64,000 nt of DNA from Isurus oxyrinchus (taxonomy: Eukaryota), in assembly GCA_026770705.1 (NCBI GenBank), contig JANJGN010000026.1, positions 5,704,001 through 5,768,000 on the forward strand. The letters run 5' to 3'. The notes beneath the pieces are model-generated. The model saw only the letters and a list, made by a program, of their open reading frames with translations. It was not told the DNA's origin and searched no databases. A program made the translations under genes and the position numbers. This document shows positions 1,661-41,960 of this stretch, one piece after another (the first letter of the stretch is position 1; each line of letters opens with the position of its first letter).

Positions 1661-2300
1661 TCCAAGGACACTGCCTCCGCTGCCACATCTCCACTGAAGT
1701 TATTTTTTATGGCTGAGCTCAGAGAGAGATTTCATGTGGTTAATTTCGCTGGTCTGACAGAAGAATCCTTCAATTGTAAAATGGGCAACATTACCAGCCC
1801 GCCTCACTCAACCCCTCCCCAACGCTGCATCCCTCCAGAGGTCGGATTTCAAACCATTCCACAACATGCATGAAGAGATTTTACAAGGCGGAAACCGCTG
1901 GTCTTTGTATCTTTCAAAGCTCCCCTTCCATCTGCAAGTTGTTCTGAGATTTTTAGACAAGTTCCCCCTTAATGGTGGAGACGGAAGCCTCTCCGTCTTT
2001 GGGCTGTAATCTGCCAGGATGAGATTTTCCTCCGCGCTCCCTTTCTGTAATCTCATGAAACTCGAGCCTGGTGGTGTGAGCTTCATACCTAGAGCGAAGA
2101 CGCGCAGGAGAGCGAGAATGGACCGAAAACCAGCAGCACCAAACAGCACTGAGGTACATTTATTTCCCAACTTCACCGTTTCAGTTAGTCACTGAAACCT
2201 AGCGGTGAAAGATGGGAACCGGCCTCAGTCTGTGTGCATCACCGAGGTGCAACTGTCGAGAAAACACCAGATTAACACGTATTGATGATAGAAATTCTTC

Positions 2301-3364
2301 TCACTGTTTAATGAATTTAACACTTACAGAAAAGGGATATTTCACCACATTCTTCAGCTCCTCTCTGAATTTAGTCTGGGTCACTGCATAAATAGCCGTG
2401 TTGGTGCAACAACCCAGGAGCTGAAACATAAATCCCAGTTGCTGTACAAATTTAGGTGTTTATAAATAGATAAAAGCTAACAGATACAACCTGTTACAAA
2501 TAGAATATATCAAAAAGATCGCCCACAGCAGGATAAAATTCCCAGATATAGCAAACAGTAAAATGATGGATTTCCTACGTTTCTCCATCTCTGGGTCACT
2601 GGGATTCTCCCCATTGCAGTGAGCCCGGAGTCTCCTGTGGGCTCTGCTCGACACTAAAATATATCTGACAGTTAAAGAATTCAACACCAAAATCAAAACA
2701 AATAGTGCAAATGGGGTTAAAGTATAATGAAAGAATTCGATTGCTGCCCACATTGATGAAAGATCAGCATCCTGCACTAATATGCAAAGCCAAGGATTGT
2801 TGGAAATCCAATATATGCCTTCATACATAAAATACCAGAAAGTGTTCTTCACAAAGAACAGCAGATTCAATGTTCCGAGAACCACAGCCGTTGCATGCTC
2901 AGTGCAATATTTTGTTTTCAACTTCTGGTAACAAATGGCCAGGAATCGATCAAATGTGAAAGAGACAGTGAACCAGAGAGAACAATCTGTGGCTGCAAAA
3001 AGCAGGACAGCATGGATATTACAGAGTTGACGTTTCGAGTCCTCATGACCCTTCGACAGAATTAATTTTATGGTCATGAGGACTCGAAACGTCAACAGTT
3101 TTCTTCTCTGCCAATGCTACCAGACCTGCTGAGTTTTTCCAGGTAATTCTGTTTTTGTTTTGGATTTCCAGCATCCGCAGTTTTTTGTTTTTATATATGG
3201 GTATTACAGACTTTAATCCTCCACATGAACTGAAACTGATCCCAATAACAAATAGAAATCTGCCTAAATATGAGGTCAATGATAACGACCAGTAGATCCA
3301 CGGTTGCCATGGACACCAGGTAACGGGTAACACATTTTGAGAGACTGCACCTTCCCCGAGACAA
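2301..3364 (-). pseudogene. GPR139/GPR142-like GPCR pseudogene, exon 2
   Basis: Reads LSRGRCSLSKCVTRYLVSMATVDLL...KVCNTH, then an insertion (3026-3196), then CNIHAVL...FTFDRFLAIC...EMEKRRKSIILLFAISG...; in-frame TAA at 2462-2460; then TM7 ...LLGCCTNTAIYAVTQTKFREELKNVVKYPF...KQ and TGA at 2303-2301. The acceptor and first codons of the exon were not found. Confidence 0.9.
3026..3196 (+). mobile_element. Short Penelope-derived insertion with 5' inversion, inside GPCR exon
   Basis: 14-bp target duplication ATGGATATTACAGA (3012-3025) / ATGGGTATTACAGA (3197-3210); perfect 25-bp inverted repeat at 3026-3050 / 3072-3096. Confidence 0.85.
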
Positions 3365-3934
3365 TCCTGTTGTAGCAGGAAACCAAATACAGCAGCAGGT
3401 CCCAGCGCCATTTGCTGACAGTATTCATTGAGTTCGGAGTGAAAATCATTCATCCCATGAACGTGCTGCAAATTGCACACATGGGCTTGGAAATCCATAT
3501 TCAGGATGGGCTGTGATATGGGCCAAAGCGAAATGGTTCATTTTCTGACAAGTCATTTGAGTTGAATATGAAAGTTGTGGAAACAAGCAAATACAAATTT
3601 GTATTCATAAATTGCCCTTCAGATCAAAATATCCTGAAGTGCTTTCCTGATAATGGTTGTTCCTGCCAAAAGCACAAAACATTTTAGACTTTACGTCAGG
3701 GACAACCAAACTTTCTATCAAGTCAAAAGAACAGGATATCAAATGGTCCGCCGAATTGAAGAAAATAAAATGGAGACTCAATCCGAGCTGGATACTGAGC
3801 GATGGAAAGGAACAGAAGAGAGTGAGTGGCACCCCAAAAATCAGGCTGAGAGAGCATGGGGTAATTTACTAATGGATGGGACGTGTGTTTTGGATCAGGA
3901 ACTGAATAAGCCAGTGTTTGGGACTTGAATGTGT

Positions 3935-14416: not shown

Positions 14417-14537
14417 CAGGAACACCAACAGCAGCGAGGAGCCGATAGTAACTCCTTTGTAAATCATAAATTACCCACAGAATCCGAAGTTCAGTTGGAA
14501 TATACCAGAACATGATCTCATTTTTTGTGAGATCCAA
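14417..14537 (-). pseudogene. Exon 1 of the GPR139-like pseudogene
   Basis: ...LQRSYYRLLAAVGVP-G|GTAAGT, a phase-1 donor homologous to exon 1 of the intact paralog (YYPFLATIGVP-G|GTAAAT). TTG at 14537 may be a mutated start; an in-frame ATG lies at 14513. Pairing with exon 2 at ~3364 is inferred. Confidence 0.75.
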
Positions 14538-14602: not shown

Positions 14603-14642
14603 TTGATATAGGCGGAGCAGAGTCTCCAGTGATTCAATTAAA
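14603..14642 (-). promoter_or_regulatory. Putative GPCR core promoter (HD site + O/E-like + TATA)
   Basis: Minus strand TTTAATTGAATCACTGGAGACTCTGCTCCGCCTATATCAA; same layout and spacing as 33190-33226. Confidence 0.5.
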
Positions 14643-14916: not shown

Positions 14917-15023
14917 TAACAAAACAAAAGCAGAATTACCTGGAAAAACTCAGCAGGTCTGGCAGCATCGGCGGAGAAGAAAAGAGTTGACGTTTCAAGT
15001 CCTCATGACCCTTCAACAGAACA
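14917..15023 (-). mobile_element. Short Penelope-derived insertion
   Basis: Same family as 4494-4635; 9-bp TSD GAATGAAGA (14908-14916, 15024-15032). Confidence 0.85.
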
Positions 15024-22600: not shown

Positions 22601-25600
22601 ATTCAGATTGCTTCATATTCAGATACAGATTAATATATATTCAGGTACACAATGATTCAGATTCTCACTCAGAAGGATTTGAATTCATATTCAGAATGGC
22701 TTAGATTCACATTCAGATTAATTCAGATTCACATTCAGAATGTTACACGTTCATATTCAGAATGATGCACATAAATATTCAGAATGATACTGCTTAACCG
22801 GCAGAATGATGCAGGTTCCGATGGAGTTTGATGCAGGTTTGGTCAGATTCACATTCTGAATGATTCAGATTCACATTGAGAGTGATACAGACTTGAAATT
22901 AGTGCCATTCATGGATTGTCAATTAATTATTTGAACATTCAGAATGTGTAGGCTCATATAAGGATTCAGGCTCCGGTTCACATTCAGAATGATTTAGTAT
23001 CGTATTCAGCATGACTCAGGTTCAAATTAAGATTAAATCAGATTCACATTCAGAATGACTCAGATTTAAAACTAGTGCCATTGAGTTATGGATTTTGACA
23101 GAATCGTGTGAACATTCAGAATGTGTCAGATTCACATTCAGAACGATTCTGATTCACATTACGATTCAGATTCACATTGAGATTGACTCATATTATGGTT
23201 GTGGTTGAATCAGGTTCGAATTCACCTTCACAATGATTTAGATTAGTATTCAGAATGTTTCAGAATTACATTCAGAATGATTCAGATTCAGATTCAGGTT
23301 GATTCCATTTCTGATTCCGGATGATTCGGACTCATATTTTGAATGGTTAAGATTCACATTCACAATGATTCAGTATGGGATTTTGATTAATTGAGATCAA
23401 CATACAGAATAATACTGATTCACATTCAGATTAATTCACATTCGGATTCAGATTGATTCAGATTCGCCTTCTGAATGTTACTGATTCACATTGAGATTTT
23501 TTCATGATTAGATTCGGATTGATTCATGTCCTGATTCACAATGATTCAGTTTCCCATCAGAAGGATCTGGAATCATTCAGAATGACTCACCTTCATGTTC
23601 AGATTAATTCAGATTCACATTCACATTGAATCAGATTCACATTTAGAATGAAACACAATCACATTCGCAGTGATACTGATTCACATTCAGGGTAACTCAG
23701 ATTGAAAGTTAGAATGACTCCAATTCATGCTGAGCTTGACTCATTAGTATACGTTTTGTTTCAGGTTCGGATTCACATTCAAAATGAATTAGATTCATAT
23801 TCAGAACGATTAAGATTAACATTTGGAATTATTCATGATCAGATTCAGATTGATTCAGATTCTCATTAAAATGCATTTGATAAGGTAACGCGTAAAAAGG
23901 TTATTGCACAATATAGGATCTCAAAGTATTGGGGAAATGTACTAACATGGATTCAGCATTGGGTAACCCAGAGAAGGCAACGAGTCGGGATGAAAGGGTC
24001 TTTTTCAGGTTCGAAAGATGTAACTAGCGGCATTCCACAAGGATAAGCCCTAAATCCTTCATTATTTTCTATCTATATTAATGACTTGGAGAAGTGGGGA
24101 GAGTATAATGTTTCCAAATTTGCCAATGAAACAAAAATATGTGGGAGTGCAGGCTGTGATGAGGACATAAGGAATCTTCAGGGGGATATGGATAGGTTGA
24201 GTGAGTGGGCAAAAAATTGGAAGTTGGTGTTTAATGTAGGAAAGTGTGAGGCCATGCATGGCAGGAAAAATCAAAAGGCAGACCTTTATTTAAATGGAGA
24301 GGAACTCCACAAAATTGAAGCAAGAGTGATCTGGGTGTTCCTGTACATGGAAAACAAAACGTTAGCATGCAATTGCAGCAAGTAATTATAAAGGCAAACA
24401 GAATTTTTAGCTGTATTGCTAGGGGGTTGGAGTTCAAAAATAGCAAAGTCTTGTTACAACTGTAGAGGGTGTTGGTGAGGCCAAACCTGGTGAATTGTGT
24501 AAAGTTTTAGTCCCCGTATTTAAGTAGTGATATTCTGGCATTGGAGGCATTTCAAAAAGATTCAGTAGGCTGATTGCTAGGATGAAGGGGCTGACATATC
24601 AAGAACAGTTAAGCAGAATTGGATTTTATTCATCAGATTATAGAAGAATGAAGGGTTATCTTTTTGAAACGTACACGATTCTGAGGGAGCTTCACAGGGT
24701 AGATGTTGAGAAGATGTTTCAACTAGTGGGGAAATCTAGAACTAGGGGACATAGTTCCAGAATTGGGGGAACTCATTTAAAAATGAGATGAGACGGGATT
24801 TCTTCTCTCAGAGGGTAGTGAATGGCTCGAATTCTCTATCCCAGAGTGTTGTGGAGGTTAGGTCACTGCAAGCATTTAAAGAAGAGATAGATAGTTTTTT
24901 GAAATGTCAGGGAGTGGAGGCTATGAGGAACTGGTACGAAAGAGGAGTTGAGGCCCGGTTCAGATCAGCCATCTTCTTATAAAAAAGAAGGGCAGGCCTG
25001 AGAGGCTGAATGGCCTACATATGTTCCGTTTTTTTATGTTCCCATGTTCTAATAATTCTGTTTCATATTCAGGTTGATTATATTTTGAATGATTCCGATT
25101 TGGAGTGAGAATGATTCAGATTCACCTTTGTAATAATTCAAATTCACATTCAAAATGATTCTGGTTCATGTTCAGAAATGATCACTTGGAGGTTCAGACT
25201 GATTCCGACTCAAGTTCAGAATTTTGGAGCTTCTGATTCAGATTGAATCAGATTCTCAAACAAAATGTTTTATAATTTTGTTCAGAACGATTCATATTCA
25301 AATCCCAATTGACTCAAATTCACATTCAGAATAATTCTGAATTGAATTCGTAATGATTCAGATTTACATTCATAATGATTCAGGTTCACGCTCTGAATGT
25401 TTAATGGTCACATTCATATTGATTGAAGTTCATATTGAGAATTATTCAGATTCACATGCAGAAAGATTCAGACTCAGAAAGATTTCGATTCAAATTCAGA
25501 ATGATACACTGTCGGATTCAAATGGATGTAGACTCTGATTGAGAAAGATTCAGATTCACATTTATAATGACTCCAATTAAGATTCAGATCGTTTCCATTC

Positions 25601-26529: not shown

Positions 26530-27680
26530 AATTTTAAATCATTCAATGGACGTGGGCTTCTCTGGCCAGCATTTATTGCCCATCCCTTTTGCCTGTCGCT
26601 GGTGGTGAGCTGCCCAATTGCGCCACTGATGTCCATATGGTATAGGCGCACCCACAGTGCTGATAGGATGAGAGTTCCAGGATATTGACCCAGCGACAGT
26701 GAAGGAATGGCCAAGTCAGGATGGTGAGTGACTTGGAGGGGAACTTTCAGTTGGCAGTATTGCCATTTATCTGCCACCAATGTCCTTCTACATGTGTGTG
26801 GTCATGGTTTTGGAAAGTGCTATCAAAGGAGACTTGGTGAATTCCTGCAGCGTATTCTGTAGATGGCACATGCTTCTTATATTGTGCGTCGGTGATAGGA
26901 GGAGTGAGTGTTTGTGGACGTGGTGCTAATCAAAAGGGCTGTTTTTTCCTGGGTGGTGTCAAGTTCCTTGAGAATTATGTAAGCTGCACTTAGCCAGTAA
27001 AGTGGGGAGTATTCCATCACACTCCTTACTTATGCCTTGTAGATGATAGGCAGGCTTTGGGGAGTCAAGAGGTGACTTACTCGTCACAGCATTCCTAGCC
27101 TCTGGCCTTCTCTTGCAGCCACAATCTCCCGGGATGTTGATCGTGGGGGATTCAACGATGGTAATGTCATTGAACATCAGGGGACAATGATTGGATTCTC
27201 TCTTTTTTGCGGATGGTCAATACCTGTGTGGCGTGAATATTAACTGCCACTTCTCAACTCAACCCTGGACATTGTCCAGGTCTTGCAGCAATTGGGCATA
27301 GACTGCTTCAGAATCTGAGGAGTCAGAAATGGTGCTAAACATTGTGCAATCATCAGTGAACATCCCCAATTCTGACCTTATGATGAAGTAAGGTAATTGC
27401 TGAAGCAGCTGAAGATGGTTGGGCCGGGAATACCACCCTAAGGATCTCCTGCAGTGATGTCTTGGTGCTGAGATGACAGCCCTCCAACATCCACAAGAAA
27501 TTTCCTTTCTGCATGTATAACTTTAACCAACCGTAACTTTTTCCCCTGATTGCCATTGACTTCAGTTTTGCCAAAGCCCTTTGATGCCACACTTGGCCCA
27601 ATGTTGCCTTGGAGTCGAGGTCCGTCACTGTCACCTCACCTCAGCAGTTTATCTCCTTTGCCCATCTTTGAACCAAGGCT
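26530..27680 (-). mobile_element. HER1-like LINE fragment
   Basis: Collinear with 5990-7190 (QVWHQRALAKLKSM, ESPTINIPG). Confidence 0.8.
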
Positions 27681-27699: not shown

Positions 27700-30600
27700 T
27701 TGTGGTGCAGCTATATTAATCCCTAGAATAAATAGAACCCTGCACTGGGAAATTTCTCCACCACTCCAACAATCACGTCTCCTGTTTTCACGTTTTAAAT
27801 TTATATTTTTATAACTAAATTGGCTTGAACCGCCATGAATTCCGCGAACTAACACATTCTCCTGCAGTAACTCTTCTGGACAGCAGATGGCTCTATCGCA
27901 TAGCATTAATGTGTGCATAACCCCTGTATCTTTTAGGCTCTTAACCGACATTCCTGCCTTGCTCGGAAAGCGTGGAAACACTTTTCCTTCGCATATGAGC
28001 TATTTATGGGTCTCTGTAACTTGCCCTTCAGAACTTCCTTCGGCAGGTTGTGAAAACCTCCCCGCCTCTCTGGCGAATACTGACTGTTCCGTTTTCATCT
28101 GTACAAGGGATATTGGCCTGTCTTGCATGTGTTCAACTTTAGAAGACTGCTATCGTTCAGCTTGCTCCGTGTTACTAATACTTTTATAATCATAGGTTTA
28201 CTTTATCTCTGATTCTCTTGCTGGGCCCCGTATGATCCTTTTCCTACACTCAACTACTTGTGTGATATATCAAAAGTATCGGATAAAACGGCAGTTTCCC
28301 TGGAGTTTTTAATGGTTTTTCATCTAACTATGTCTTGATGGTTACTGGAATAGTATTTCTAAATTATTCCATAATCATAATGTTCCTTAAATTGTCATAA
28401 GTCTTGTCTAATTTCAAAGACCTCAGCCTTGGTTCTCGAAGAAATTATTCATTTTCCTTGAAAACTCTACATATGGTTGATTAGTTCTATTTCTTACAGA
28501 CCTAACCTTCAACTGATAAGCTTCAAAGACAATTTCATATGCACTTAGTATTGCGCTTTTAGCTTCCTCGTAGCCTGCACATGGGACCTCTGATAAGCTC
28601 GTGTACATATTCGTTACTGTACCTGAGAAAACACTTAGTAGCATTATGTCGAAGTATCTCGTGGCCAATTCAATTTCATAGCTACCTTTTCAAATCATCT
28701 GAAACATCTTTCAATTCCATGCTCCGTAAAATTAGGCACTAACTTAAGATTTTTTGTTAAATCAAATTCCTCAAAAAATCAAAGTCACCATTTGAATCAC
28801 CAATTCTTCTTTCCTCCTTTATTGTAAGTTTTACTTTAGACAATTCACACTGCCTGGCTTCTTTCTCTCTCTGAAACTCTATATCTCAACTTCTCTCTTT
28901 CCTCAGTTGCTACCTTCTGTCTCTATAGTTGAAGTTCGAGCTTTCACATTTCTATTTATTAAGAACATAGGAACATAAGAAATAGTAACAGTAATATTCA
29001 GCCCCTCGAGCCTGCTCCGCCATTCAATAACGTTTTCCGATGTTTCAGAATCCACATTTCCACCTAACCCCGAACACCTTTGAGACCCTTGCCTAACAAG
29101 GGTTTGTCTATCTCTGCCTTAACAGTATTCAATGGCCCCGCCTTCAATACCTTATGAGGCAGAGAATTCCAAAGTCGCACAACCAGCTTTGAAAGAATAA
29201 TTCCCCTCATCTCTGTCCTAACAGACCTCTTGCGACTTTTTCCTTTTCCTCATCTTGCCCTTCTTCCTCCCTCCCCATCCAAGTGCTTTTATTTCTATTT
29301 ATTCTAATCTGTCCTTATCTTCTTCTTCCTCATTTCTTTCAAATTCAAGTTTTCTCATTTCTCAATTTACTTCTGATTCAAGTCCCTTCAGTTCAATTTC
29401 TTGTTCAAGTTAAAACTTCTTCATCTGCAACTGAAGCCCTACAAATTCCAACTATGAAACACGATTCTCAAGTGTCTCTTCCTCTAACTTTAAATGCTGA
29501 GTAAGCAGTTCAACCATATGAGCCTTAAAAAAATCAGCGTTTATTTCTATCTGGGCTTCATCTGATAACTCTTTTAGAGATTTCAAATGCTCCAAAGTTA
29601 CATTTTGCACTCCCAGAAAAGTCTTAGCAGTTGCATTTTCAAATCCAACCACTTTACAGTCCATCAACACAAACACCCTGACTTCAGCACTCTCTTTTTA
29701 GGTTAACAAATTGCAATTCAAGCAAATAATTTTAAATCAGGCAAAGACCCCCCAAAATTTATTGCAACTTCAGCCGATGTTATTTGCTGAGCAAGACAAA
29801 TCCTAGAGGGAAACCTGTCTTCCTGTGCATAACATTTGCATTTGTATTTTGAAAACAAGAAAAAAAAGCGACTGATCCAAGAAGCATAGAATTTCAAAAG
29901 ACCTTTAGGATTTTGAAACGTCAAAAGATTTATTAACAGGAAGGAAAACAGTGACAATTTAAGATTAAAGTTACGAAGTTGAAACAGTACTACAAAACAT
30001 TGCCAGCACCCTGCCCACAAAACCCCAAATAATCAGGATACACAAGTAATCTATTTGGAAACAACATCCTTACATATTTTTAACTATAAAAATCCATAAA
30101 TATTATCTCAAGTCAAAGCTGCTAATTATTTAGAAAGGATTTACCACATGGCTCTTCAAACACTTGCGCTCTGCTGCGGAAATCCAAGAAAGTTCGGAAC
30201 ACAAACTGCTTTCTGGATAAAATATAACCTTTTTTTTCTTATTTGGCTGGAAGACTGTTTTCAGATATATTACATTGTCTCAGGACAGAGCTGGTCTCAG
30301 GACATCTTCCTCGCACAACCACCACAAATGAGCTCAGCATCTTGATACTAGCAAAATACTGTGGATGTTGGAAAGCTGAAATGAAAAGAGAAACAAAAAA
30401 AGGCACCCCGTTTTCTGTTTTTATTTCAGCTGAACATCTTTCCTTAAATATCCTTTTCCCCTTTCATCTTAGAGTCTATTTTCCTCAGCACCTTCTTGAG
30501 CTAAACCTTTCCATAATAGAAACATCATTAATATTTTCCAATGCCTCCACTTTAGGGTGAAATAAGATATAACAACCTTCCCGTTTTTCTGATGAAACAA

Positions 30601-30960
30601 TTGTAAGTTTCAAACATCTTTGACACTCTGCTTTGAAATTTAACAGCTGCAAGGTCAATTCCCTATCTCCAAATGCGAATTTTAATAACGCACCCTATTT
30701 ACTTCGAAATCCAACTTCACTGTTGCCTCTGATTGCAAATATATGTAACTTGCACCTTCACACTTTTATCTCTCAAGTCATAGATGCAAGCAGCCTCTAT
30801 GAACCTAACCCAAGCTTTATAAATAATGAGCACACACACAAATACACAAGCATCTATTTAGAAAACCAGCTTATTGCCAAAATACTTTCGAAAAAGCATG
30901 CATCTTGTTATAAAACTGTAATAATTTTTCATATTGTTATTGAGATTTATTGCAAAGTAG
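27700..30960 (-). mobile_element. Gypsy (Gmr1-like) LTR retrotransposon remnant: putative LTR + gag
   Basis: Gag-like ...YTSLS...YEEAKSAILSAYEIVFEAYQLKVR...QPYVEFSR (28423-28668) and N-terminal part (29452-29676); degenerate PBS-like TGGGGGGTC...GATTT at ~29735-29756. LTR extent is uncertain. Confidence 0.65.
28960..29225 (-). mobile_element. CR1 3' fragment nested in gag
   Basis: AAGAACATAGGAACATAAGAAATAG tail followed by CR1 3' sequence. Confidence 0.7.
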
Positions 30961-31519
30961 GCATATAGGTGTGGTTCTGGATGTTTCTGTCTGTGTGTAA
31001 TATATTTGATTTGCTAATGAGTAATCATGGATGAGACCTTAGCGAATAATGTGCAAAGGAAGTAAATGAGATGTTTGAATTTCAAAGAGATGGTAGGATG
31101 TTTACAAATGGCGCGATAAGCAATGCCAAGCATTGTGCTTATTTTTCTAAAAAGGAAAGTGCTTATATTGGTATCAAGAAAGATATTTATTTTATGGGAA
31201 AAGTAAATTTGTGAAGACATATGGAATAGTGGAATTTAGAGGTTAAAGATGGAGAACCATATATAAAGCGGAAGGAAAGGCTATTTTAGGGTTGAAACAG
31301 GGACATGTAATATCTAACAGGAGTCCGTGAAGCAGCTTTGGAGAAGCCTCCAGCCATATTTTGCAAAAGTCTGCTGTGGACAGTAACTAAAGCTGGAGAA
31401 AAGCCTTTTGGAATTCTATTATCGCCTGGGTGTTGTGGTAACGTGCTGGCTTGCTTTTAAAATCTAAAATCTATTTTGAACTGTTGCATTAAAAGCGGTA
31501 GGTAAGTGCTCCTGCAAGT

Positions 31520-31890
31520 CTAAACTATTTTGACTTGGAACTATATCGTCGTTCCTTCACTGCCACTGGGTCAAATTCCTGGAACTGCTTTCAAACATCA
31601 GTGAAGGTGTAACTTCATCAGGTGGACTGCAGTTATTCAAGAAGGCAGCTCACAACCATCATCACAAGGGTAATTAGGGGTGGACAACAAATGCTGGCCT
31701 TGCCACTGAAGCCCACATCCCATGAAAATTATCCGCTGCTCTCACTTAGTTTGGCTAATGTGAGACTCCAGATCCACAGAAATGTGGTTGACTCTAAACA
31801 GCCGTCGGGAATTGCCTAATAAGCCGTTCATTTCAAGGGCAATTAAGGGAGGGCAGCAAATATTGACCTTTCCAGCGAAGCCCACACCCC
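31520..31890. mobile_element. HE1-type SINE/LINE tails, tail-containing pieces in both orientations
   Basis: AAGGGTAATTAGGGGTGGACAACAAATGCTGGCC and AAGGGCAATTAAGGGAGGGCAGCAAAT. Confidence 0.6.
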
Positions 31891-31894
31891 ATTA

Positions 31895-31990
31895 AAAATA
31901 TAATAATAATATAATAATCATAATAATAATAATTATTATTATGAATAAGGATAATAATAATGATGATAATAACAATAAAAAATAATAACA
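31895..31990. repeat. (AAT)n microsatellite
   Basis: Imperfect AAT run. Confidence 0.9.
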
Positions 31991-32009
31991 ATATGCTGCA
32001 AATCTGCTC

Positions 32010-32760
32010 ACAGGATGTCGATGGCTGGAACAAGATCTATCCACAAGGAATGTCACCAGTTTCAACTGGACCTGACCACACAGAAATTAATAGGGTGGAA
32101 CTAGGTCTATCCACAGTGAATGTAACAGGTTGAATTGAACTTCTTCACACTGCATTAAAGCGCCTTAATCTCCGCCTCTGTGCTGAGAGTAAACAGGTTG
32201 AATTGGCCCTCTACACATTGTTATTAAACTGGGCCCTGAAAAACTGAATTTATTACCGCTGCTCGTACAAATGTGCATTTCAATGCTTGAAATAAACCAG
32301 TTGGCCTGGACTGAGATCGGCTTCTGAACACTGAGCGCAGCCTATTGAACATCTCCTCCCCAAAGTGAATTTAACCATGATGAACTGGACATGTCCCGGA
32401 CTTTCTGAAAATTTGTGGAATGAATCCGGGCACAGTCACGGTTCCGGTATTAGTGCGGACATGTACGCGAAAAAAATATATTAAAATGAAACTGTGATCA
32501 ACTAGACCAGCCTTTGCAGAATTACAATTCAATTAACTGGCGATATCTATACTGAATATATTCACCCTTAACTGGACATGTGAACAGTGAATGCAACTGC
32601 ACTGGCCTGGGACAATGTACCGTCAATGCACTCGTGCAGAAGAGAATGAAATGCTACTCTGCTGATCTGGACTACAATTCACTCAACGTAACGGTGCCGA
32701 ACCAGACCTGTCCTCACTGAAAATAACACTGCATGATTGGAAATGTAACAATTAATTCAC
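32010..32760. repeat. Degenerate ~35-bp minisatellite upstream of the GPCR
   Basis: Units like AACTGGACCTGACCACACAGAAATTAATAGGGTGG / AACTAGGTCTATCCACAGTGAATGTAACAGGTTG. Confidence 0.65.
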
Positions 32761-33189
32761 AGAGGTTGATTTGAGTTTGTATGCACAGCTCCAGAGTACT
32801 TGAAGTCAATGGTGTTACAGCACAATGTCATAGGGACTGAACAATGTTCAGGAATGAGAACTAAACCGAGTTTTTCCTTCGAGCCAGAATCTTTCTGGTT
32901 CATTGACGCTTGTGCTGAGACTTAACGCAGTATTGGTGGGTTCACAGCGGATAATTATCCATGCATATTACTCGTTTTCGCCATTGAAACCACCTATTTA
33001 GCCTTTCATTATCTTCTTATGAAGGGACATAATTGGAAGTACATAACTGTACTCCCTGGGTATTTTACGTTAGAGACTATTCGGAGCCTTTTAAAAGCAT
33101 TACATACAATCAAAAAATAAACACGATCCTGGCAGCAGCTGCAGTAAACTGTTTGTTTCAATTAGTATAAATATGCAAAGAGTCAAACA

Positions 33190-33226
33190 TTTAATTAACT
33201 CCCGGGAGCCGGACATCGGGTATAAA
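33190..33226 (+). promoter_or_regulatory. Putative GPCR core promoter (HD site + O/E-like + TATA)
   Basis: TTTAATTAACTCCCGGGAGCCGGACATCGGGTATAAA; TATAAA at 33221-33226, 57 bp before the ATG at 33278. Confidence 0.55.
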
Positions 33227-33277
33227 CGTGACAATTTTTCCATGTCGTATAGAACGCGCTGACAACTATTGCTAAAC

Positions 33278-33347
33278 ATGCACGGATCACGGAAAGATCT
33301 TTTCTTTGCCATTTACTATCCTTTCCTTGCAACTATCGGGGTTCCAG
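33278..33347 (+). CDS. GPR139/GPR142-like GPCR, exon 1
   Basis: MHGSRKDLFFAIYYPFLATIGVP + G, then donor GTAAAT (phase 1). Confidence 0.85.
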
Positions 33348-34279
33348 GTAAATTATTGTAGTTAATTGTTTCTTACGGGATTCATTGATTATATGTTATC
33401 ATTGCTCTCATTTACTCGCGGCTCTTCTCTATTGTACCGACATCTTCTCCCTGCTCCCTTCCAAGGTATCTTTATCCTTCAAGCATGGAATTTCTTCAGT
33501 CCAATTGACATAATTTCTCCTCTTTACAATACTTTCACATATTAGTTCTCCAATTCAACGACATAATTACTTACATTTACTGCTGCAATTTATAACCATT
33601 AATGATATAATTTCTCCCCTTTAACAGTGTACTTTTAGTCGTTTATCAGTGTGGTTTCTTCACATTACTGCAATCAATTCTCCCCTCTCTCTTGATAATA
33701 TCAGTTTGAACTTTACTGGATAAATCTATCCAATGCAATGGTCACAGCTAAAAATAATGATAGATTTTTTTTCCTCTTCCAAAGTATAATTTCCTCACTC
33801 TTGCTGCACAATTTCCTACGGTTACTCATACCATTTCACAGCACAAACGTGATCCTATCCTGTTGACACCATCACTGTGGGTGAGTTGTCACATTTTTAA
33901 GACAGTGTAAATGTAGTTTTATTATGCTATTGACACTGATCAGTTTCGACAAGAGATTCACTGAATGAAATTATTCAGAACTTTATTAAACCCCCTCTGC
34001 ATTTTATGATGAACTTTTTTGATGGGACATTACTAACCATTAATTTGTTAACAGAAATATGTTCAAAGTAACGAGTGTTGACTGTACGAATGAATCTGTG
34101 CTTGTGCTCAACTCACAGAATGCACTGTCTCTGCTCTCATACCGAAACACCTATCTACTCATCTCGATTCTCCTCCTCCACCTTAGATGCTGCTGATAAT
34201 TCTACCGTGTCAGCTGCTGAGTCCGGTTATCTTTGCTGCTCCTAGCATCTGCTAATGTCCAGGACTGTCCACTCAACGA

Positions 34280-34765
34280 AGAACAAAGAAAAGGTCAGCA
34301 CAGGCCCTCCAAGCCTGCGCCGATCATATTGCCCGTCAACTAAAACATTTTGCACTTCTGGATTCATAATCCCTCTATTCCCATCCTATTCATGTATTTG
34401 TCACGCTGCCTCCCAAACACCACTATCGTACCTGATTCCACCACCTCCTCTGGCAGCGAATTCCAGACACTCGCTACCCTCTGCGTAAGAAATTGCCCCG
34501 CACATCTCCTGTATAGTTTCCTCCTCTCACCTTAAATCTATCTCCCCTAGTAATTGACTCTTCCACCCTGGGAAAAAGCTTCTGACTATCTACTCTGTCC
34601 ATGCCACTCATAATTTTGTACATCTCTTTCAAGTCGCCTCGCAATCTCCGTCCCTCTCATGAGAACAATCTGAGCTTCTCCAACCTCTCCTCATAGGCAG
34701 CATCCGGGTAAACCTCCTCGGCACCCTCTCCAACGCCTCCATATCCTTCTGATAATGTGGGGATA
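34280..34765 (-). mobile_element. CR1 3' fragment in GPCR intron
   Basis: CR1 3' RT/UTR sequence on the minus strand. Confidence 0.7.
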
Positions 34766-35229
34766 ACTCCTTCAGTCTTTCCTCCCTATAGTTTGTGCCG
34801 CCATAATTGCTGGCACTTCTCGTATCTGATACAAAAGTTTTAATTGCAATATTACGAAATTTATCCTAACAGTACAGTGCAGCACGAAACAGGAGTTGCA
34901 TTCTTAACGGGAAGAGACCTTATGATCTGCTAGCTCTGGGGGTCCATGTCGACAATAGAGATCCCAGGCAACTGCCAGGAGAGGCGCTGGGAGTTACAAG
35001 TGCGGCTCGTCAAAATCTCTAATAGTCTGAAACTATGAATTGCCCTATCGTGGCTCTCTATCTGAGGATCATTTTTATACAGCTAGGCTGCGGAGCTTTC
35101 CAATAGTGGGTCATTTTAGCGTAATTCACAGAGTGAGGCCCGAACCCAGCTGGATATAATACGTTGTAGAAATAAGTTTCGGTTTGAACTTCTTGTTAGT
35201 TTATCTTTTGCGGTCTCTTTCCTCGATCG

Positions 35230-36270
35230 TTTAAATATCACTCGCGGAGTATCACAGGGATCAGTATTTGTGCCCCAGCTATTCAGAATATATATCAATG
35301 ATTTGGATGTGGAACCTAAATTAATATTTATAAGTTTGCTGACGACACGAAACTCGGTGGGAATGTGAGCGATGAGGAGATTATTAAGTGACTTCAAGGC
35401 GACTTTGACAGGTTCGCTGAGTGGGAAAATAAGTGCCATATGCAGTATAACTTCGAAAACTGTGAAGTCATCCACTTTGGTAGGAAAAACAGAACGGCAG
35501 GGCATTATTTAAATGGTAATAGACTCGGAAATGTTAATTTACAAAAGGATCTGGGTGTCGTTGTACACCAATCATTGAAAGCAAGCATGCAGGTGCAACA
35601 AGCAGTAAACGAGGCAAATGTTATGTTGGCCTTCATTGTGAGAGGACTGGAGGACAAGAGCAAGGATGTCTTACTACAGCTGTACAGGGCCTTGGTGATA
35701 CTACACCTGGATAATTGTTTGTAGTTTTGGCCTCCTTACCAAGGAAAGGGTATACTTGACATAGCGACAGTGCAACAAAAGTTCACCAGAGTGATTCCTG
35801 GGATGGCAGGATTGTCGTATAAGGAGATCTTGGGCCGAATAGGCCTGTATTCGCTGAAATTTAGAGGAATGAGAGGGAATCTCATTGAAACATATGAAGT
35901 TCTGACAGGGATGGATAGACTGGCTGCAGGTATGATAGTTCCTCTGGCTGGTGAGTCTAGAACAAGGGGTCACAGTCTCAGGGTATAGGGTAGAAAATTT
36001 AGAACTGAGATGAGGAGAAACTTCTTCAATCAGAGGGTGGTGAACATATGGAATTCTCCATCACAGAGAGCTGTGGAGCCCAGGTCATTGAATATATATA
36101 AGAAGGTAAATGGCAGATCTCTGGATTCTAAAGACGCTAAGGGGTATAGGACGAGTGCAGGAGTACAGCGTTGAGATAGAGGATCAGCTATGGTCATACT
36201 CAATGGTGGAACAGGCTCGAATGGCACAATGACCTACTCCTGCCCCTCGTTTCTATGTTTTTCTATGTTC
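35230..36270 (+). mobile_element. CR1 RT fragment in GPCR intron
   Basis: KFADDTK; NCEVIHFGRKN; RTRGHSLRV. Confidence 0.85.
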
Positions 36271-36602
36271 CGATCACCTGTGATACGTTATTGATGCCAT
36301 TCCCTTTCTCTGTGTGGTGTTCCCACGTTTGGTGCAAAGTGTTTGTGACGGGCTTACATTTATTAGGTATTTGCCCTTTCCTACTTTAAAACGAGACATA
36401 ATTTATTATTTTATTCACAGGAGACGTTCCTGTCGCTTAAAGGACAATTTCCAAACAGCATCATGTGAAAAGCACAATATTTCACACAGAAACCAGTGAA
36501 ATGAATGTTATTTTGGGTTTCGAACAGTAGCGTTGCTGTTCCCAAGAACTCACATGATAAAGACACTCTCGCTTATTCAATTTCTCTCACTCTCTCTTAC
36601 AG

Positions 36603-37522
36603 CTAACTTGGCAGTGATTATGATCCTGTCTCGAGGAAGATGCGGTCTCTCCAGGTGCATCACTTACTATTTGGTTTCTATGGCCGTGTCGGACCTCATG
36701 GTGATTATCAATTCTGTGATATTAAACCGGATCGCTGGTATTTATTTCCCATTTAGTTTCCTGGCCATCACACCGGTCTGCAGTCTCCGTTCTGTCTTCA
36801 ACTATGCAGCCTTAGGCTGTTCAGCACTATTAACGGTCGCTTTCACCTTTGATAGATTTGTGGCCATTTGTTGTCAAAAGTTGAAAATAAAATATTGCAC
36901 CGAGAAGGTGGCAGCGCTGGTTATCGGAACAGTCTGCGCAATCAGCTGTTTTATAACTTCCTTCTTGTATTTGATTTATGAACCTTTGCACACAATTCAC
37001 AATGTACCCTGGTTCTGCAGCATAAAGCACATATTTTATACGTCACCTTCTTGGGTGACATATGACTGGATTCTCCACATTTTAACTCCTTGTCTCCCGT
37101 CCATTCTGATTTTACTGCTCAATGCTTTGACTGCCAGGCACATTCTCGAGGCCAGTCGGGCCCGCAGGAGACTCCAGGCCCAGAGCAGTAGAGAGAATCA
37201 GACTGACCCAGAGATGGAGAAGAGGAGAAAGTCCATTGTTTTACTCTTTGCCATTTCCGGCAGCTTCATCGTATTATATTCGTTAACTTTTATCACCTTC
37301 CTCTACGTCAGAATTGCGAGAGTTACTTATTTCTCTGGTTCCAACTTCAATGAATCAAATGTCATTCTGGAGGAAAGTGGATTTATCTTGAAACTTTTCA
37401 GTTCCTGCATCAATCCTTTTATTTATGCCGGAACCCAGAGTAAATTCAGAGAGGAGTTAATAAATGGGGTGAAATATCCACTCAGTTTCATTTTTAAATT
37501 ATTTAAATTACGAGAAAGGTAA
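36603..37522 (+). CDS. GPR139/GPR142-like GPCR, exon 2 (spliced protein 329 aa)
   Basis: Pyrimidine tract + AG at 36601-36602, phase matches exon 1 (G+CT=Ala). Seven-TM pattern with NL (TM1), MAVSDL (TM2), FTFDRF (TM3), TPCLP (TM5), SSCINPFIY (TM7) and helix 8 KFREEL. The frame is open to TAA. Confidence 0.92.
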
Positions 37523-38007
37523 ACCCTACATGAATGGCACATTATAACTGATTTGTTTGTTCTCTGGCTCTATGTAACAACTGACCTCTCCACCCAGGTA
37601 CAATGTCATTCTCTTCACAATATTTATCCATTGTGTAATTTTAAAGCTTTGCAATTTGTTCTCGGTCAGTTTCTAGTTCTTTTACCAGCTGTGACCCAAG
37701 CCTGGTTCATTCTCACAGCTCCACGGGCGCCTCAGTATCACTACAGTAATGTGGGCGAGAGAGTCTGGCCTGTCATCTCTCATTGGATACGCATTCAAAC
37801 TGTCTAATGAAGAAATCTCAATATCCCTCCTGGGTAAAGTTTGGTTCACGAGGGTGGAATACGCTCTGAAATTGGAATGCTTATTGTTCCATGCACTGCA
37901 CCCCTTTTACTGAGCACCGACATGCACCCACATATCTGTGCCACTGTCAGGTGTGCATAAACTTAATAGCAGGGTAATTAGTGGAAGGGATTAGTTCAGT
38001 CTTTCAG

Positions 38008-38289: not shown

Positions 38290-41200
38290 GAGCCGAAGTG
38301 AGACGTCAAAGGAAAAGAGGTAGGTGGGTATTCCTTCAGTTTGTGCTTTGATTGGCCAAATGTTTTAAATCTTACTACAGCTGAACGGTAAAGTTTAGAA
38401 ATTTACTTTTACAATAGGTAACATCCAAATTAATTAATTGAATAGAATAGGGTTGGCTGGGCAGGGGATGTGTTGCAGATATAGTTTGGGGGATTGGTGG
38501 ACGGTGGTATGATGCAAGGTGACCACATCTGTAACAAGTGTTGGCTGCTCGAGGAACTTCAGCACCGAGTTGATGAGTTGGAATCTCAGCTGTGGACACG
38601 GCGACACATCAGGGAGGGGGAGCTTTTACCTCGATTCCGTGCTTCAGGAGGCAGTCGCAACCTCTTAGATTGATTACTTTAAATTTTGACCGTGGTCAGA
38701 GACAGGAGGGCGTGGCTGCGAGTGGGGCAGGTTTGGGGATCCAAAAATTATCTGTGGAGGAGCTTCAGCCGGTCACTTGTCCAATAGGTAAAAGGTTCTT
38801 GCTCCCACTGTGGACGAGGGCAGAGACTGCATGGAGGATGAGCGAACAGACTACAACATTGTGGTACAGAACGCCTTTCAAGTGCAGTGAGGAAAGAGAA
38901 ATGAGCTTTTAATAGGGAATAGCATAGTTACGGGAATTGATATTGTTCTCTGCAGTAAAGGCAGAACTCCGTGAAAGCTGGGTGTGTTGTCTACCTGATT
39001 CCAAGGTTAAGGACATCTCCTTTGTGCTGAGAGGAACTTGGAGTGGAAGGCGAAGGATCCAGTTGTCGTGGTCCACGTAGGAAACAAAGATTTGGTCGCA
39101 CTAAGGTAGAGCTTCTGCTAAGGGGCTAGGAGCAGATCGGGACTAAATTAAAAAGCAGCATCACAGAAGAAATAACATGCAGATCAGTACCTGAGCCACG
39201 TGAAAATTAGCTTTGCGTAAAAAACAGATTAGAAAGGTAAGTGCGTGGCTCAAAGATTGGCGTGGGAGAAATGGTTTCCGATTGATTGGGGTATTGGCAC
39301 CAGTACAGGTGAAGGGGAGAGCTCTACCGTTGGGATGGGCTTCGTTTGAACCATGTTGGGAAATGTCCTGGAAAATCTTATAACTAGGGTTGTTGATGGA
39401 ATATTAAAACAATCATTATGAGGTGCGGGGGTGGGTATGGACCTACTGAAGGGAAGTTTAAAGATCAAAAATTAACGAGAGGGCAGAGGTATAGAGCAGT
39501 GAAGACGCGAACGATACTCAAAGTGTAACAAGAAAGGGCAGAAAATATAAGGAGAAGAGTGCAGCCGAAATCAGAACCAGAATGGGCAAGAATGGTGAAA
39601 ATCAAAGTAAAAGGCCTTTTATCTGGATGCTTGCAGCATTTATAATAAGATAGCTGAGTTGAAGGCACAAATAGAAATAAATGAATATGACTTGATAGCT
39701 ATTACAGAGACATGGTTGCAGCGTGTCCAAGATTGGGAACTCAATATTCAAGGGTCTTCGACTTTCTAAATAAGGACAATTACAGAGGTATGAAACTGAG
39801 TTGTCTAAAGCGGGCTGGGAAAATAGGCTAAGGGGAATGTCAGTGGATGACCAGTGGCGAACATTAAAGCTGATATTTCATAACTTTCATCAAAGTATTA
39901 TCCCTGGCCAAAAAAGGACTTGAGAAGGATGAACCACCTGTGGTAAACAAACGTGGTCAAAGAGAGCATCGAGTCAGAACCTCGGGCGTCCAAATTGGTG
40001 AAAACTAGTGGTAGGCCAGGGGATTGTAATTTTTTTGGGAGCCAACAACAGATCGCTAAAAAGATAATGAAGAGGGAGACAATTGATTATGAAACTAAAT
40101 TGGCAAGAAATATCAAAACAAACAGAAAGAGCTTCCACGGGTATATAAAAGAAAGAGTGGCTTAAGTGAGCATGGGACTCATGGAGGATAAGATTGGAGA
40201 GCTGATAACGAGGAATGCAGAAATCGCATGCAATTGAAACCAATATTTTGCTTCGGTCTTCATTGTGGAGGGCGCAATAAACATCCAAAATATATCAGAT
40301 AAACAAGGAGCTAATGGAAGGCATGATCCTGCAACAGTCTCTATCAGGAAGGAAAATGAATTTGACAGACTAATGGGACTATAAGCAGACAAGTCGCCAG
40401 GACCTGATGGTCTGCATCCAAAGGTTTTAAAGGAAGCAGCTGCAGAGAACTTGAGGCATTGGTCGAAATATTCCATAACTCACTGGATTCCGGGAGGGTC
40501 CCAACGGTTTGCAAAACTGCTAATGTGATGCCCCTGTTCAAGAGGAGAGGGAGACAAAAAGCCAAATTCTATAGGACAATCAGCCTGACATCTGTCGTTG
40601 GGAAAAGCTTGAATCTATTATTAAGGAAGAAATAGCAGGACATTTAGAAAAGCTTAATGCAGTTAAACAGAGTTAACATGGTTTTGTGAAAGGGAAATTA
40701 TGTTTGACAAATTTGCGAGAGTTCTTTGAGGATAAAGAATGCAGGGTTGTTAAAAAGGGAACCAGTAGATGTGGTGTATTCCGATTTCCAGAAGGCATTC
40801 AATAAGGTGCCAAATAAAGTGTGTTTTGACAAGATAGGAGTCCACGATATTGGGAGTGATATATTAGCATGGATTGAGGATTGGTTAACACACAGAAGAC
40901 AGACAGTTGGGATTATTAGATATTTTTACAGTTGGAAATGTGTAACTAGTGGAGTGCCACTATGATCAGTTCTGGAGCCCCAAGTATTTACTTCCCATAT
41001 TAATGACTTGGAGGAGGGGCCAGAGTGTAATGTATCCAAATTTGCTGACGATACAAAAATAGGTGTGAAGGCATGTTGTGATGAGGACAGACTGAAGCTG
41101 CAAGGGGATATAGAGAGGCTAACCTATTGGATAAAGACGGCACAGATGGAGTTTAATGTCACAAAGTGTGAGGTCATGCATCGAAAGGCAGACTATTATT

Positions 41201-41960
41201 TAAATAGAGAGAGACTCCCAAAAAGTGCAGCACAGAGGGATCTGGGTGTTTTTGAGATTGAAACATAAGAAGTTAGCATGCAGGTGCAGCAAATAATTAA
41301 ACAGGCACATAGAATTTTGGCTGTATTTATCAGGGGTTGGAGTTCAAAATATAGAGAAGTCTTGTTACAACTGTACAGCGTGTTGGTGAGGCCGCACCTG
41401 GAGCATTGTGCACAGTTTTGGCCCCCATATTTAAGAAAGGATATAGTGGCATTGGTGGCACTTGAAAAGAGATTCACTAGGGCGGTTCCTGGTATGGATT
41501 GTTGATTATCTAGAACAGCTGAACACGTTAGGGCTTTATTAATTAGAGTTTAGAAAAATGAATGGGGTGATCTTATTGAAACGTGTACGATTCTGAAGGA
41601 GATTGACAGGATTGATGTTGAGAAGATGTTTCCACGAGTGGGAAAATCTATAACTAGGGAACATAATTACAGCATAAGTGGACACATATTAAAAACCGAG
41701 ATGCAAAGGAATTTCTTCTCTCAGATGGTAGTGAATGTCTGTAATTCTGGAGCCAGAGCATTATAGTGGCTAGATCACTGAAAGTATTTAAAGAGGAGGT
41801 AGATACATTTTTGAAATATCGAGGAGTTGATGGCTATGAGGAGCTGGCACGAAAGAAGGATTGAGGCCTGGACAGATCAGCCATAATCTTTCTGAATGGC
41901 GGGGAAGGCTTGAGGGGCCGAATGGCCTACTCCTGCTCATATTTCTTATCTGTTTATGAG
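38290..41960 (+). mobile_element. Degenerate CR1 LINE with ORF1 remnant and internally deleted ORF2
   Basis: ORF1-like remnant at ~38450-39410; IAITETW; DVVYSDFQKAFNKVP; KFADDTK. Confidence 0.85.

What the first reader, a model, noticed from the sequence alone, without database searches (positions are those of the whole stretch)
33030..33226. Olfactory-type promoter module shared by two divergent GPR139-like genes: a candidate shark chemosensory receptor family
Seen: the intact gene has TTTAATTAACTCCCGGGAG..TATAAA (33190-33226) and the pseudogene has TTTAATTGAATCACTGGAGA..TATATCAA (14642-14603, minus). The TAAT-to-TATA spacing is 29 and 30 bp, although the proteins are clearly diverged and the flanks are unrelated. 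A second TAATTG (33030-33035) + TCCCTGGGTA (33053-33062) pair lies upstream of the intact gene. Established: adjacent homeodomain (Lhx2/Emx2, TAATTR) and O/E (EBF, TCCCNNGRGA) sites are the signature of mammalian odorant-receptor promoters; GPR139 and GPR142 respond to aromatic amino acids; amino acids are fish odorants; sharks have very few classical ORs. Inference: this clustered, birth-and-death GPCR family may be an unrecognised olfactory receptor repertoire. The O/E matches are imperfect.
Basis: partly seen in the sequence, partly recalled or inferred. Interest (0 to 1): 0.8.

Follow-up and report, generated by a model that had tools for sequence, protein, structure and literature searches.

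The report
Shared promoter module of shark GPCRs
Two old copies of a receptor gene family that has multiplied greatly in sharks and rays keep the same short control sequence just before their first exon, but nothing here shows that it is a smell-receptor switch or that the genes work in the nose.

Summary
A TAATTR site, 2 nt, a TCNCNGGAG element, 11-13 nt and a TATA box lie 57 nt (intact gene, +) and 97 nt (pseudogene, -) upstream of the start codons of two exon 1s. I validated both exon 1s against homologues. The 19-nt core is 15/19 identical. With the equal TATA spacing it appeared in 0 of 2000 shuffled pairs, while the flanks do not align and the proteins are about 46-50% identical. It is most likely a conserved proximal promoter module.

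The "olfactory" reading is not shown:
- The O/E-like elements are 2 mismatches from TCCCNNGGGA (162 such sites in the window).
- Juxtaposed Lhx2/Ebf motifs mark mouse OR enhancers rather than promoters.
- GPR139 is the nearest solved relative only by profile, and its four key agonist-binding residues are not kept.
- In four RNA-like runs, contigs start at the exon 2 acceptor. None covers exon 1 or the module, and the only joint seen uses a donor 286 nt upstream of the TATA box.
- The tissues of these runs are unknown.

The upstream TAATTG/TCCCTGGGTA pair looks like chance.

The parts
33190..33226 (+). Promoter-proximal module of the intact gene: TAATTA (33192-33197), 2 nt, O/E-like TCCCGGGAGC (33200-33209), 11 nt, TATAAA (33221-33226). 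The TATA box starts 57 nt before the ATG at 33278.
14603..14642 (-). The same module upstream of exon 1 of the dead paralogue: TAATTG (14640-14635), 2 nt, O/E-like TCACTGGAGA (14632-14623), 12 nt, TATATCAA (14610-14603). The TATA box starts 97 nt before the ATG at 14513.
33030..33062 (+). Upstream TAATTG (33030-33035) and TCCCTGGGTA (33053-33062), 17 nt apart. Probably chance: no counterpart in the paralogue, and T33033 reads C in the X1 contig.
33278..33347 (+). Coding exon 1 of the intact gene (MHGSRKDLFFAIYYPFLATIGVP plus the first base of the next codon). Donor GT at 33348-33349.
   Evidence: Among the 80 homologues with the GxP anchor, 72 have a 23-aa N-terminus of this type.
36603..37522 (+). 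Coding exon 2 of the intact gene (7tm_1). Acceptor AG at 36601-36602.
   Evidence: Contigs of 4 RNA-like runs begin at 36602.
14418..14513 (-). Exon 1 of the second-subfamily paralogue (MFWYIPTELRILWVIYDLQRSYYRLLAAVGVP). Donor GT at 14416-14415.
   Evidence: Homologue N-termini of the type MSLSFWIKLKILWVITDVQKIYYPVLATFGVP.
2295..3413 (-). Exon 2 of that paralogue, dead. It has an in-frame stop (window 2460-2462), a change of frame, and a ~170-nt mobile-element insertion at about 3023-3190.
32600..32935 (+). 3' part of a non-coding upstream exon seen in run X1. Donor at 32935|GT, joined to 36603. The contig continues about 660 nt to the left of 32600.
   Evidence: tables 5 and 8. Stop codon in the joining frame at 32923-32925.

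Best explanation
This is a conserved proximal promoter module of an elasmobranch family of two-exon class A GPCRs that is distantly related to GPR139 and greatly expanded. The layout is TTTAATTR, then AN, then TCNCNGGAG, then 12-13 nt, then a TATA box, shortly before coding exon 1. Shown: the layout, its retention in two paralogues of different subfamilies whose flanks no longer align, and the validity of both exon 1s. Inferred: TBP/TFIID binds the TATA box and transcription starts roughly 25-35 nt downstream (recalled rule). Also inferred: the TAATT site, bound by some Q50-type homeodomain protein, and the adjacent GC-rich element sit at about -45 to -60 and confer the family's shared tissue or cell specificity. 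Which factors bind, and in which tissue, is open. Lhx2/Emx2 plus EBF in olfactory neurons is one candidate among several.
For: - 15/19 identity with TATA at 31/32 nt from the module start, against 0 of 2000 shuffled pairs.
- No other upstream similarity by blastn. Proteins are 46-50% identical, so these are old duplicates.
- Only these two places in 64 kb match the merged module pattern with 0 mismatches and a TATA box. They are also the only two exon-1-like ORFs followed by GGTAA.
- Both exon 1s match homologue N-termini.
- The spacing HD-2-O/E-11-TATA in the intact gene equals the grammar noted by other readers on other pieces of this genome (s1-870781). That is a lead and I did not test it.
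Against: - There are only two copies here and the statistic is post hoc.
- One of the two genes is dead, so the module is not under selection there now.
- No RNA contig in four runs covers exon 1 or the module (bins 33137-33494 have depth 0).
- The only joint into exon 2 comes from a donor at 32935, upstream of the module.
- The X2 and X3 contigs carry 173 and 184 nt upstream of the acceptor that lie nowhere in 32600-36601 at >=95%.
- No TSS was mapped.
Confidence: 0.6

Rival explanations
1. Olfactory-type promoter. The module is a juxtaposed Lhx2/Emx2 + EBF site that drives sparse expression in olfactory sensory neurons, and the family is an unrecognised shark odorant receptor repertoire.
For: - A TAATTR site is juxtaposed to a half-palindromic TCCC/GGGA-like element.
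- OR promoters often hold O/E, HD and TBP motifs (review PMC12547500, passages).
- The family is large and clustered, with pseudogenes.
- The N-terminus is very short.
- Variable positions cluster at pocket positions 3.29-3.36, in ECL2 after the Cys, at 5.43 and at 6.51-6.58 (helix numbering is my inference from anchors).
- Classical OR/TAAR families are tiny in sharks (PMC6368271).
Against: - The O/E elements are 2 mismatches from the consensus and such sites are common.
- Juxtaposition is the enhancer signature, not the promoter signature, in mouse (PMC5608512).
- EBF and homeodomain factors act in many tissues.
- Catshark OSNs appear to be all microvillous, with ORs/TAARs mostly silent there (PMC10116579).
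- The 50 most specific 'brain & olfactory epithelium' genes of catshark held no GPCR (PMC11979771, passage). This is weak evidence, since single receptors are lowly expressed.
- Spliced contigs occur in 4 runs from 4 studies without use of the module. Their tissues are unknown.
Confidence: 0.17
2. Chance resemblance. Two common short motifs and a TATA-like string happen to lie upstream of both exon 1s.
For: - A 15/19 match somewhere between two 300-nt regions arises in 146 of 2000 shuffles.
- HD sites average 0.5 per 300 nt, and the pseudogene upstream region has only one.
- A global MAFFT alignment did not pair the modules.
Against: - With equal TATA spacing it arose in 0 of 2000 shuffles, and with TAATT in both in 4 of 2000.
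- Both lie within 130 nt of validated start codons.
- Other readers report the same grammar at other paralogues of this genome (untested here).
Confidence: 0.08
3. The working promoter lies further upstream. Transcripts start 1 kb or more before the module in a non-coding exon, as in run X1. The module is then an intronic or alternative element, or a relic.
For: - Joint 32935|GT..AG|36603 in X1, with about 1 kb of contiguous upstream contig.
- A second X1 contig runs unspliced across 32916-33122.
- No contig lies on exon 1.
Against: - That isoform skips coding exon 1, which is conserved across sharks (72 of 80). The joining frame has a stop 4 codons before the donor, so it cannot encode the full receptor.
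- Its depth is 6 against 31 for the exon 2 contig.
- The contigs differ from the window by 1-3% and may come from another allele or copy.
Confidence: 0.15

Closest known systems
Mammalian odorant receptor promoters (HD + O/E sites, often with TBP motifs)
   Same: AT-rich upstream region with TAATTR sites. A TCCC..GGGA-like element and a TATA box lie within about 100 nt of the start of a gene of a large clustered GPCR family.
   Different: The O/E match is poor (2 mismatches). In mouse the two motifs are usually not juxtaposed in promoters (PMC5608512). OR coding regions are intronless with non-coding 5' exons, whereas here the first exon is coding. No factor binding or olfactory expression is shown.
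Greek Island composite Lhx2/Ebf motif of mouse OR enhancers
   Same: A homeodomain site and an O/E-like site lie directly side by side at a fixed spacing, and the O/E half tolerates degenerate purine/pyrimidine runs (PMC5608512, passage).
   Different: That motif sits in intergenic enhancers, not at -30 to -60 of a TATA box. I could not compare spacing and orientation because the logo is in a figure. No further composite lies in the 18-kb intergenic region here.
GPR139 (and GPR142), receptors activated by aromatic amino acids
   Same: It is the best solved relative by family profile: E 3.3e-18 and 69 bits, against 50 bits for the next hit, over nearly the whole length. The GxP-(A/V)N motif in TM1 is shared.
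   Different: The single sequence does not find it at E<=1. Key residues F109/H187/W241/N271 correspond to Y/L/Y/F here and vary across 141 members. The family has the TM3-ECL2 cysteine pair, whereas the aligned GPR139 position 3.25 is D. GPR139 is a single brain gene, while this family has hundreds of copies.
TAARs and rodent vomeronasal FPRs (non-olfactory class A GPCRs recruited to olfaction)
   Same: They are precedents for a class A family expanding and becoming chemosensory. For FPRs this happened by acquiring a receptor-type promoter (PMC7873101, abstract in search listing only).
   Different: Olfactory expression is demonstrated for those families. Here it is not.

Membership tests
OR-type promoter (HD + O/E) | Homeodomain site TAATTR within a few hundred bp upstream of the start | tested here: met
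   The intact gene has 3 distinct sites in the 300 nt upstream; that script counts the palindromic 33192 site twice, giving 4, a count reached by 1% of 300-nt windows. The pseudogene has 1 site, a count reached by 30% of windows.
OR-type promoter (HD + O/E) | O/E (EBF) site close to TCCCNNGGGA | tested here: inconclusive
   The module elements have 2 mismatches (162 such sites in 64 kb). Only the 33053 site has 1 mismatch (11 such sites). 1-mismatch TCCCNNGRGA sites are not enriched: 64 against 77 expected.
OR-type promoter (HD + O/E) | Bound by Lhx2/Emx2 and EBF; active in single olfactory neurons | not testable with these tools
   Run tissues are coded. No contig lies on the module or exon 1.
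Greek Island composite motif | HD and O/E sites juxtaposed at a stereotyped spacing | tested here: inconclusive
   There are 2 nt between the sites in both copies. The mouse spacing and orientation are available only as a figure (PMC5608512).
Greek Island composite motif | Located in intergenic enhancers of receptor clusters | tested here: not met
   Both copies lie 11-13 nt before a TATA box and within 130 nt of an ATG. No composite lies in the intergenic region 14.9-32.9 kb.
GPR139/GPR142 | Closest relative among characterised receptors | tested here: met
   Profile A2 against PDB: GPR139 at E 3.3e-18, next hit 1.8e-12. The single sequence does not find it at E<=1.
GPR139/GPR142 | Agonist/amino-acid site residues F3x33, H5x43, W6x48, N7x38 (PMC5430874 abstract) | tested here: not met
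   The window gene has Y, L, Y, F. Across 141 members the counts are Y103/F20; H71/R21/D16/L13; Y73/W62; F59/Y57/N11.
Vertebrate chemosensory receptor repertoire (general hallmarks) | Large, clustered, birth-and-death family with variable pocket positions | tested here: met
   82 of the 120 best hits come from one species. A second subfamily occurs in sharks, skates and rays. There is a pseudogene next to an intact gene. Entropy peaks fall at TM3, ECL2, TM5 and the outer half of TM6. This pattern is also common in non-sensory GPCR families.
Vertebrate chemosensory receptor repertoire (general hallmarks) | Expression in a chemosensory epithelium | not testable with these tools
   No tissue labels were available. 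The supplementary expression tables of PMC11979771 are closed.

The most novel reading that the evidence does not exclude
The several-hundred-member elasmobranch family related to GPR139 is the missing large odorant (or other external chemosensory) receptor repertoire of sharks and rays. On this reading its members are switched on one per neuron through the conserved homeodomain/O-E-like/TATA module. That would be an OR-like regulatory grammar arising, or surviving, outside the six known vertebrate chemoreceptor families.
Probability: 0.15. Interest if true: 0.9.

Novelty: new variant of a known kind. Interest (0 to 1): 0.45.

Why it matters
Sharks are famed for smell, yet they have only about 65 known chemoreceptor genes, nearly all V2Rs (PMC6368271). 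A family of hundreds of fast-diversifying class A receptors with a shared promoter module is an obvious candidate to fill that gap. It is directly testable with olfactory rosette RNA-seq, in situ hybridisation and TSS mapping. Even if the family is not olfactory, a fixed-grammar promoter kept across old paralogues gives a handle on how a very large, undescribed vertebrate GPCR family is regulated. My four paper searches found no paper on the family in the held library.

Tried and rejected
- A first composite pattern with a 5-nt gap was mis-specified. The real gap is 2 nt, so the pattern missed both modules, and I replaced it with the script.
- A global MAFFT alignment of the two upstream regions did not pair the modules. 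I used ungapped window scans instead.
A back-translated exon-1 pattern found 0 stretches in metagenome contigs. The search for related loci with profile A2 gave 105 pattern matches, none confirmed.
- The ESM Atlas gave only generic 7tm_1 clusters. These included the family's own 'probable GPR139' clusters and invertebrate Srw/Srx-type expansions. They are leads only.
- Single-sequence PDB searches did not reach GPR139. The profile did.
- A word search of earlier findings for RNA evidence was blank.
- TE origin of the module is rejected: 30000-38000 against the window shows no other copy of 32000-33350.
- An octamer-like ATGCAAAG at 33173-33180 is not shared by the other copy, so I did not pursue it.
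- I did not open supplements.
- I searched the gene model exon by exon. Exon 1 and exon 2 were never joined for any tool.

Full report
**What is there**

The window holds two genes of one class A GPCR family, in divergent orientation.

The intact gene (+) has:
- coding exon 1 at 33278-33347, encoding MHGSRKDLFFAIYYPFLATIGVP plus one base, with donor GT at 33348-33349;
- acceptor AG at 36601-36602;
- exon 2 at 36603-37522. This is a 7tm_1 domain with E 4.2e-24.

The second gene (-) has exon 1 at 14513-14418 (MFWYIPTELRILWVIYDLQRSYYRLLAAVGVP). Its exon 2 lies about 11 kb downstream, at about 3413-2295. That exon is dead:
- it has an in-frame stop;
- it has a change of frame;
- it carries a ~170-nt insertion at about 3023-3190. 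The insertion is 92-93% identical to copies at 4511-4629 and 14920-15010.

I searched the model exon by exon. The two exons were never joined.

**Are the exon 1s real?**

Of the 120 best homologues of exon 2, 80 carry the GxP-xN anchor, and 72 of those have a 23-residue N-terminus of the type MHGSPKGLVFAIYYPVLAAIGVP. This matches the intact gene.

A search with a piece of the dead exon 2 found a second subfamily in sharks, skates and rays. Its full-length members start with sequences such as MSLSFWIKLKILWVITDVQKIYYPVLATFGVP. This matches the exon 1 at 14513-14418.

A regex scan of all six frames gave 4 hits. Only these two are followed by GGTAA.

**The observation**

Both stretches read as the finding says.
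- Intact gene: TAATTA at 33192-33197, 2 nt, TCCCGGGAGC at 33200-33209, 11 nt, TATAAA at 33221-33226. The ATG follows 57 nt after the start of the TATA box.
- Dead gene: TAATTG, 2 nt, TCACTGGAGA, 12 nt, TATATCAA. The ATG follows 97 nt after the start of the TATA box.

The 19-mers starting at TTTAATT are 15/19 identical. They are the best 19-mer match between the two 300-nt upstream regions.

In 2000 pairs of dinucleotide shuffles:
- a 15/19 or better match arose in 146;
- such a match containing TAATT in both arose in 4;
- such a match followed by TATA at the same offset in both arose in 0.

The statistic was chosen after seeing the data, so it overstates significance. However, blastn finds no other similarity upstream, and the proteins are only 45.6% and 50% identical in the two aligned pieces. 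Retention of this one block therefore points to constraint over most of the time since duplication.

The merged module pattern has only these two zero-mismatch matches in 64 kb, and both have the TATA box.

**What is weak in the observation**

- One-mismatch matches to TCCCNNGRGA number 64, against 76.9 +- 10.7 expected.
- Against the strict COE/EBF consensus TCCCNNGGGA, both module elements have 2 mismatches, like 162 sites in the window. The consensus is in print in, for example, PMC2394523 and PMC4312928; I saw only the search listing.
- HD + O/E-like composites occur at 5 places (6 rows), against 1.6 +- 1.2 in 100 simulations. One of the five is in a SINE copy and one is in intron 1 (33363-33380).
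Its TAATTG reads TAACTG in the one contig covering it (33033 T>C). I take it for chance.

**RNA evidence (one read-laying run)**

None of the listed runs is on record as RNA. Even so, X1-X4, from four studies, behave as RNA:
- their contigs on exon 2 all begin at 36602, the acceptor;
- unique intron and intergenic bins are empty;
- one X1 contig shows a GT..AG joint.

That joint runs from 32935 to 36603. It links a non-coding upstream exon directly to exon 2. This exon is contiguous from before 32600, the contig is 1025 nt long, and the joining frame has a stop at 32923-32925. The joint skips coding exon 1 and leaves the module inside the intron. A second X1 contig runs unspliced over 32916-33122.

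No contig in any run lies on 33137-33494, which holds the module and exon 1. The X3 and X2 contigs carry 184 and 173 nt upstream of the acceptor that lie nowhere on 32600-36601 at >=95%.

Caveats:
- These are contigs, not reads.
- They differ from the window by 1-3%, so they may come from another allele or a near-identical copy.
- The runs were found by holding this gene.
- The tissues are coded.

This neither supports nor excludes use of the module in some unsampled tissue. It does show that the transcripts seen do not start there.

**The family**

The exon 2 search gave 2130 proteins at E<=1e-5 among 3730 candidates. The best hit is 80% identical, and 82 of the 120 listed come from Heterodontus francisci. 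The automatic names vary: GPR139, GPR15-like, capa receptor-like, FMRFamide receptor-like and TRH receptor-like.

Relation to GPR139:
- The single sequence does not reach GPR139 in the PDB at E<=1. Its best hit is CCK-A receptor at 9.3e-06.
- A 30-member profile puts GPR139 first, at 3.3e-18 and 69 bits, against 50 bits for the next hit.

So GPR139 is the nearest solved relative, but a remote one.

The residues shown by mutagenesis to matter for Trp, Phe and surrogate agonists are F109, H187, W241 and N271 (PMC5430874, abstract read). They align to Y, L, Y and F in the window gene. I used 141 of the 222 fetched proteins, those of 305-345 aa. Among them the counts are Y103/F20; H71/R21/D16/L13; Y73/W62; F59/Y57/N11. 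The inference from GPR139 to amino-acid odorants is therefore not supported.

Per-site entropy used 95 of the first 120 proteins, those of 297-345 aa. It peaks in the outer parts of TM3, in ECL2 after the Cys, in TM5 and in TM6. The intracellular loops and TM7/H8 are nearly invariant. The helix numbering is my inference from the N1.50, D2.50, C3.25 and R3.50 anchors. The pattern fits ligand diversification, but it is not specific to sensory receptors.

**Comparison with what is known**

- A review states that OR promoters are AT-rich and often have O/E, HD, MEF2A and TBP motifs (PMC12547500, passages).
- Monahan et al. report that directly juxtaposed Lhx2/Ebf 'composite' motifs are enriched in Greek Island enhancers relative to OR promoters. 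[quoted passage not shown] In layout the shark module therefore resembles the enhancer motif more than a typical OR promoter, yet it sits at a TATA box.
- In catshark, all OSNs express Go and TRPC2, ciliated OSNs appear absent, and ORs/TAARs are mostly not expressed in the nose (PMC10116579, passages).
- The 50 most specific 'brain & olfactory epithelium' genes included no GPCR, and the paper does not mention GPR139 (PMC11979771, find).
- Four searches found no paper on this family.

**Earlier notes of this scan**

Searches show that the same module was noted on several other pieces of this genome. Two follow-ups (s1-870781, s1-871174) reached the same verdict as mine: a conserved promoter, with olfaction unshown. 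I could not read those sequences. The grammar they quote, HD-2-O/E-11-TATA, equals the spacing in the intact gene here.

**Verdict**

This is a real module, probably functional and shared by the family (confidence 0.6). The olfactory reading remains an attractive but untested hypothesis (about 0.15-0.17).

Supplements were closed, so published tissue tables could not be consulted.

Noticed in passing
window 3023-3190 (-), with copies at 4511-4629 and 14920-15010: A young mobile unit of about 110-170 nt, with an internal inverted repeat and a hammerhead-like core, interrupts exon 2 of the dead GPCR gene. Its copies are 92-93% identical. One copy lies about 280 nt upstream of that gene's promoter module.
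   Followed up: partly
window about 31940-32935 (+), joined to 36603: A non-coding upstream exon of 1 kb or more is spliced directly to exon 2 in run X1, skipping coding exon 1. The X2 and X3 contigs carry other, unplaced upstream sequence (173 and 184 nt).
   Followed up: partly
window 33363-33380 (intron 1, just after the donor): A further TAATTG with an O/E-like TCCCGTAAGA on the minus strand lies 14 nt into intron 1 of the intact gene. The other copy has TTAATTGT about 77 nt into its intron, so the spacing is not shared.
   Followed up: partly
window 31524-31901, with copies at 6005-6208, 1281-1390 and 26542-26707: A SINE-like repeat family, 69-78% identical between copies, followed by an AT-rich (ATAATA)n tract at 31900-31990.
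   Followed up: no
window 34303-34760 and 35240-36240 (intron 1); 42503-43033: Repeats and LINE reverse-transcriptase fragments lie in the intron, with very high contig depth in all four RNA-like runs. Related copies lie at 24071-24868, 40945-41748, 43062-43891 and 49848-50345.
   Followed up: no
exon 2 protein, TM6 and TM7 (window 36603-37522): Many family members lack W6.48 (Y in 73 of 141) and P6.50 (P in 7 of 141). In 50 of 141 the NPxxY proline is T. The TM3-ECL2 cysteine pair is kept in 140 of 141.
   Followed up: partly
I did not examine it.
   Followed up: no
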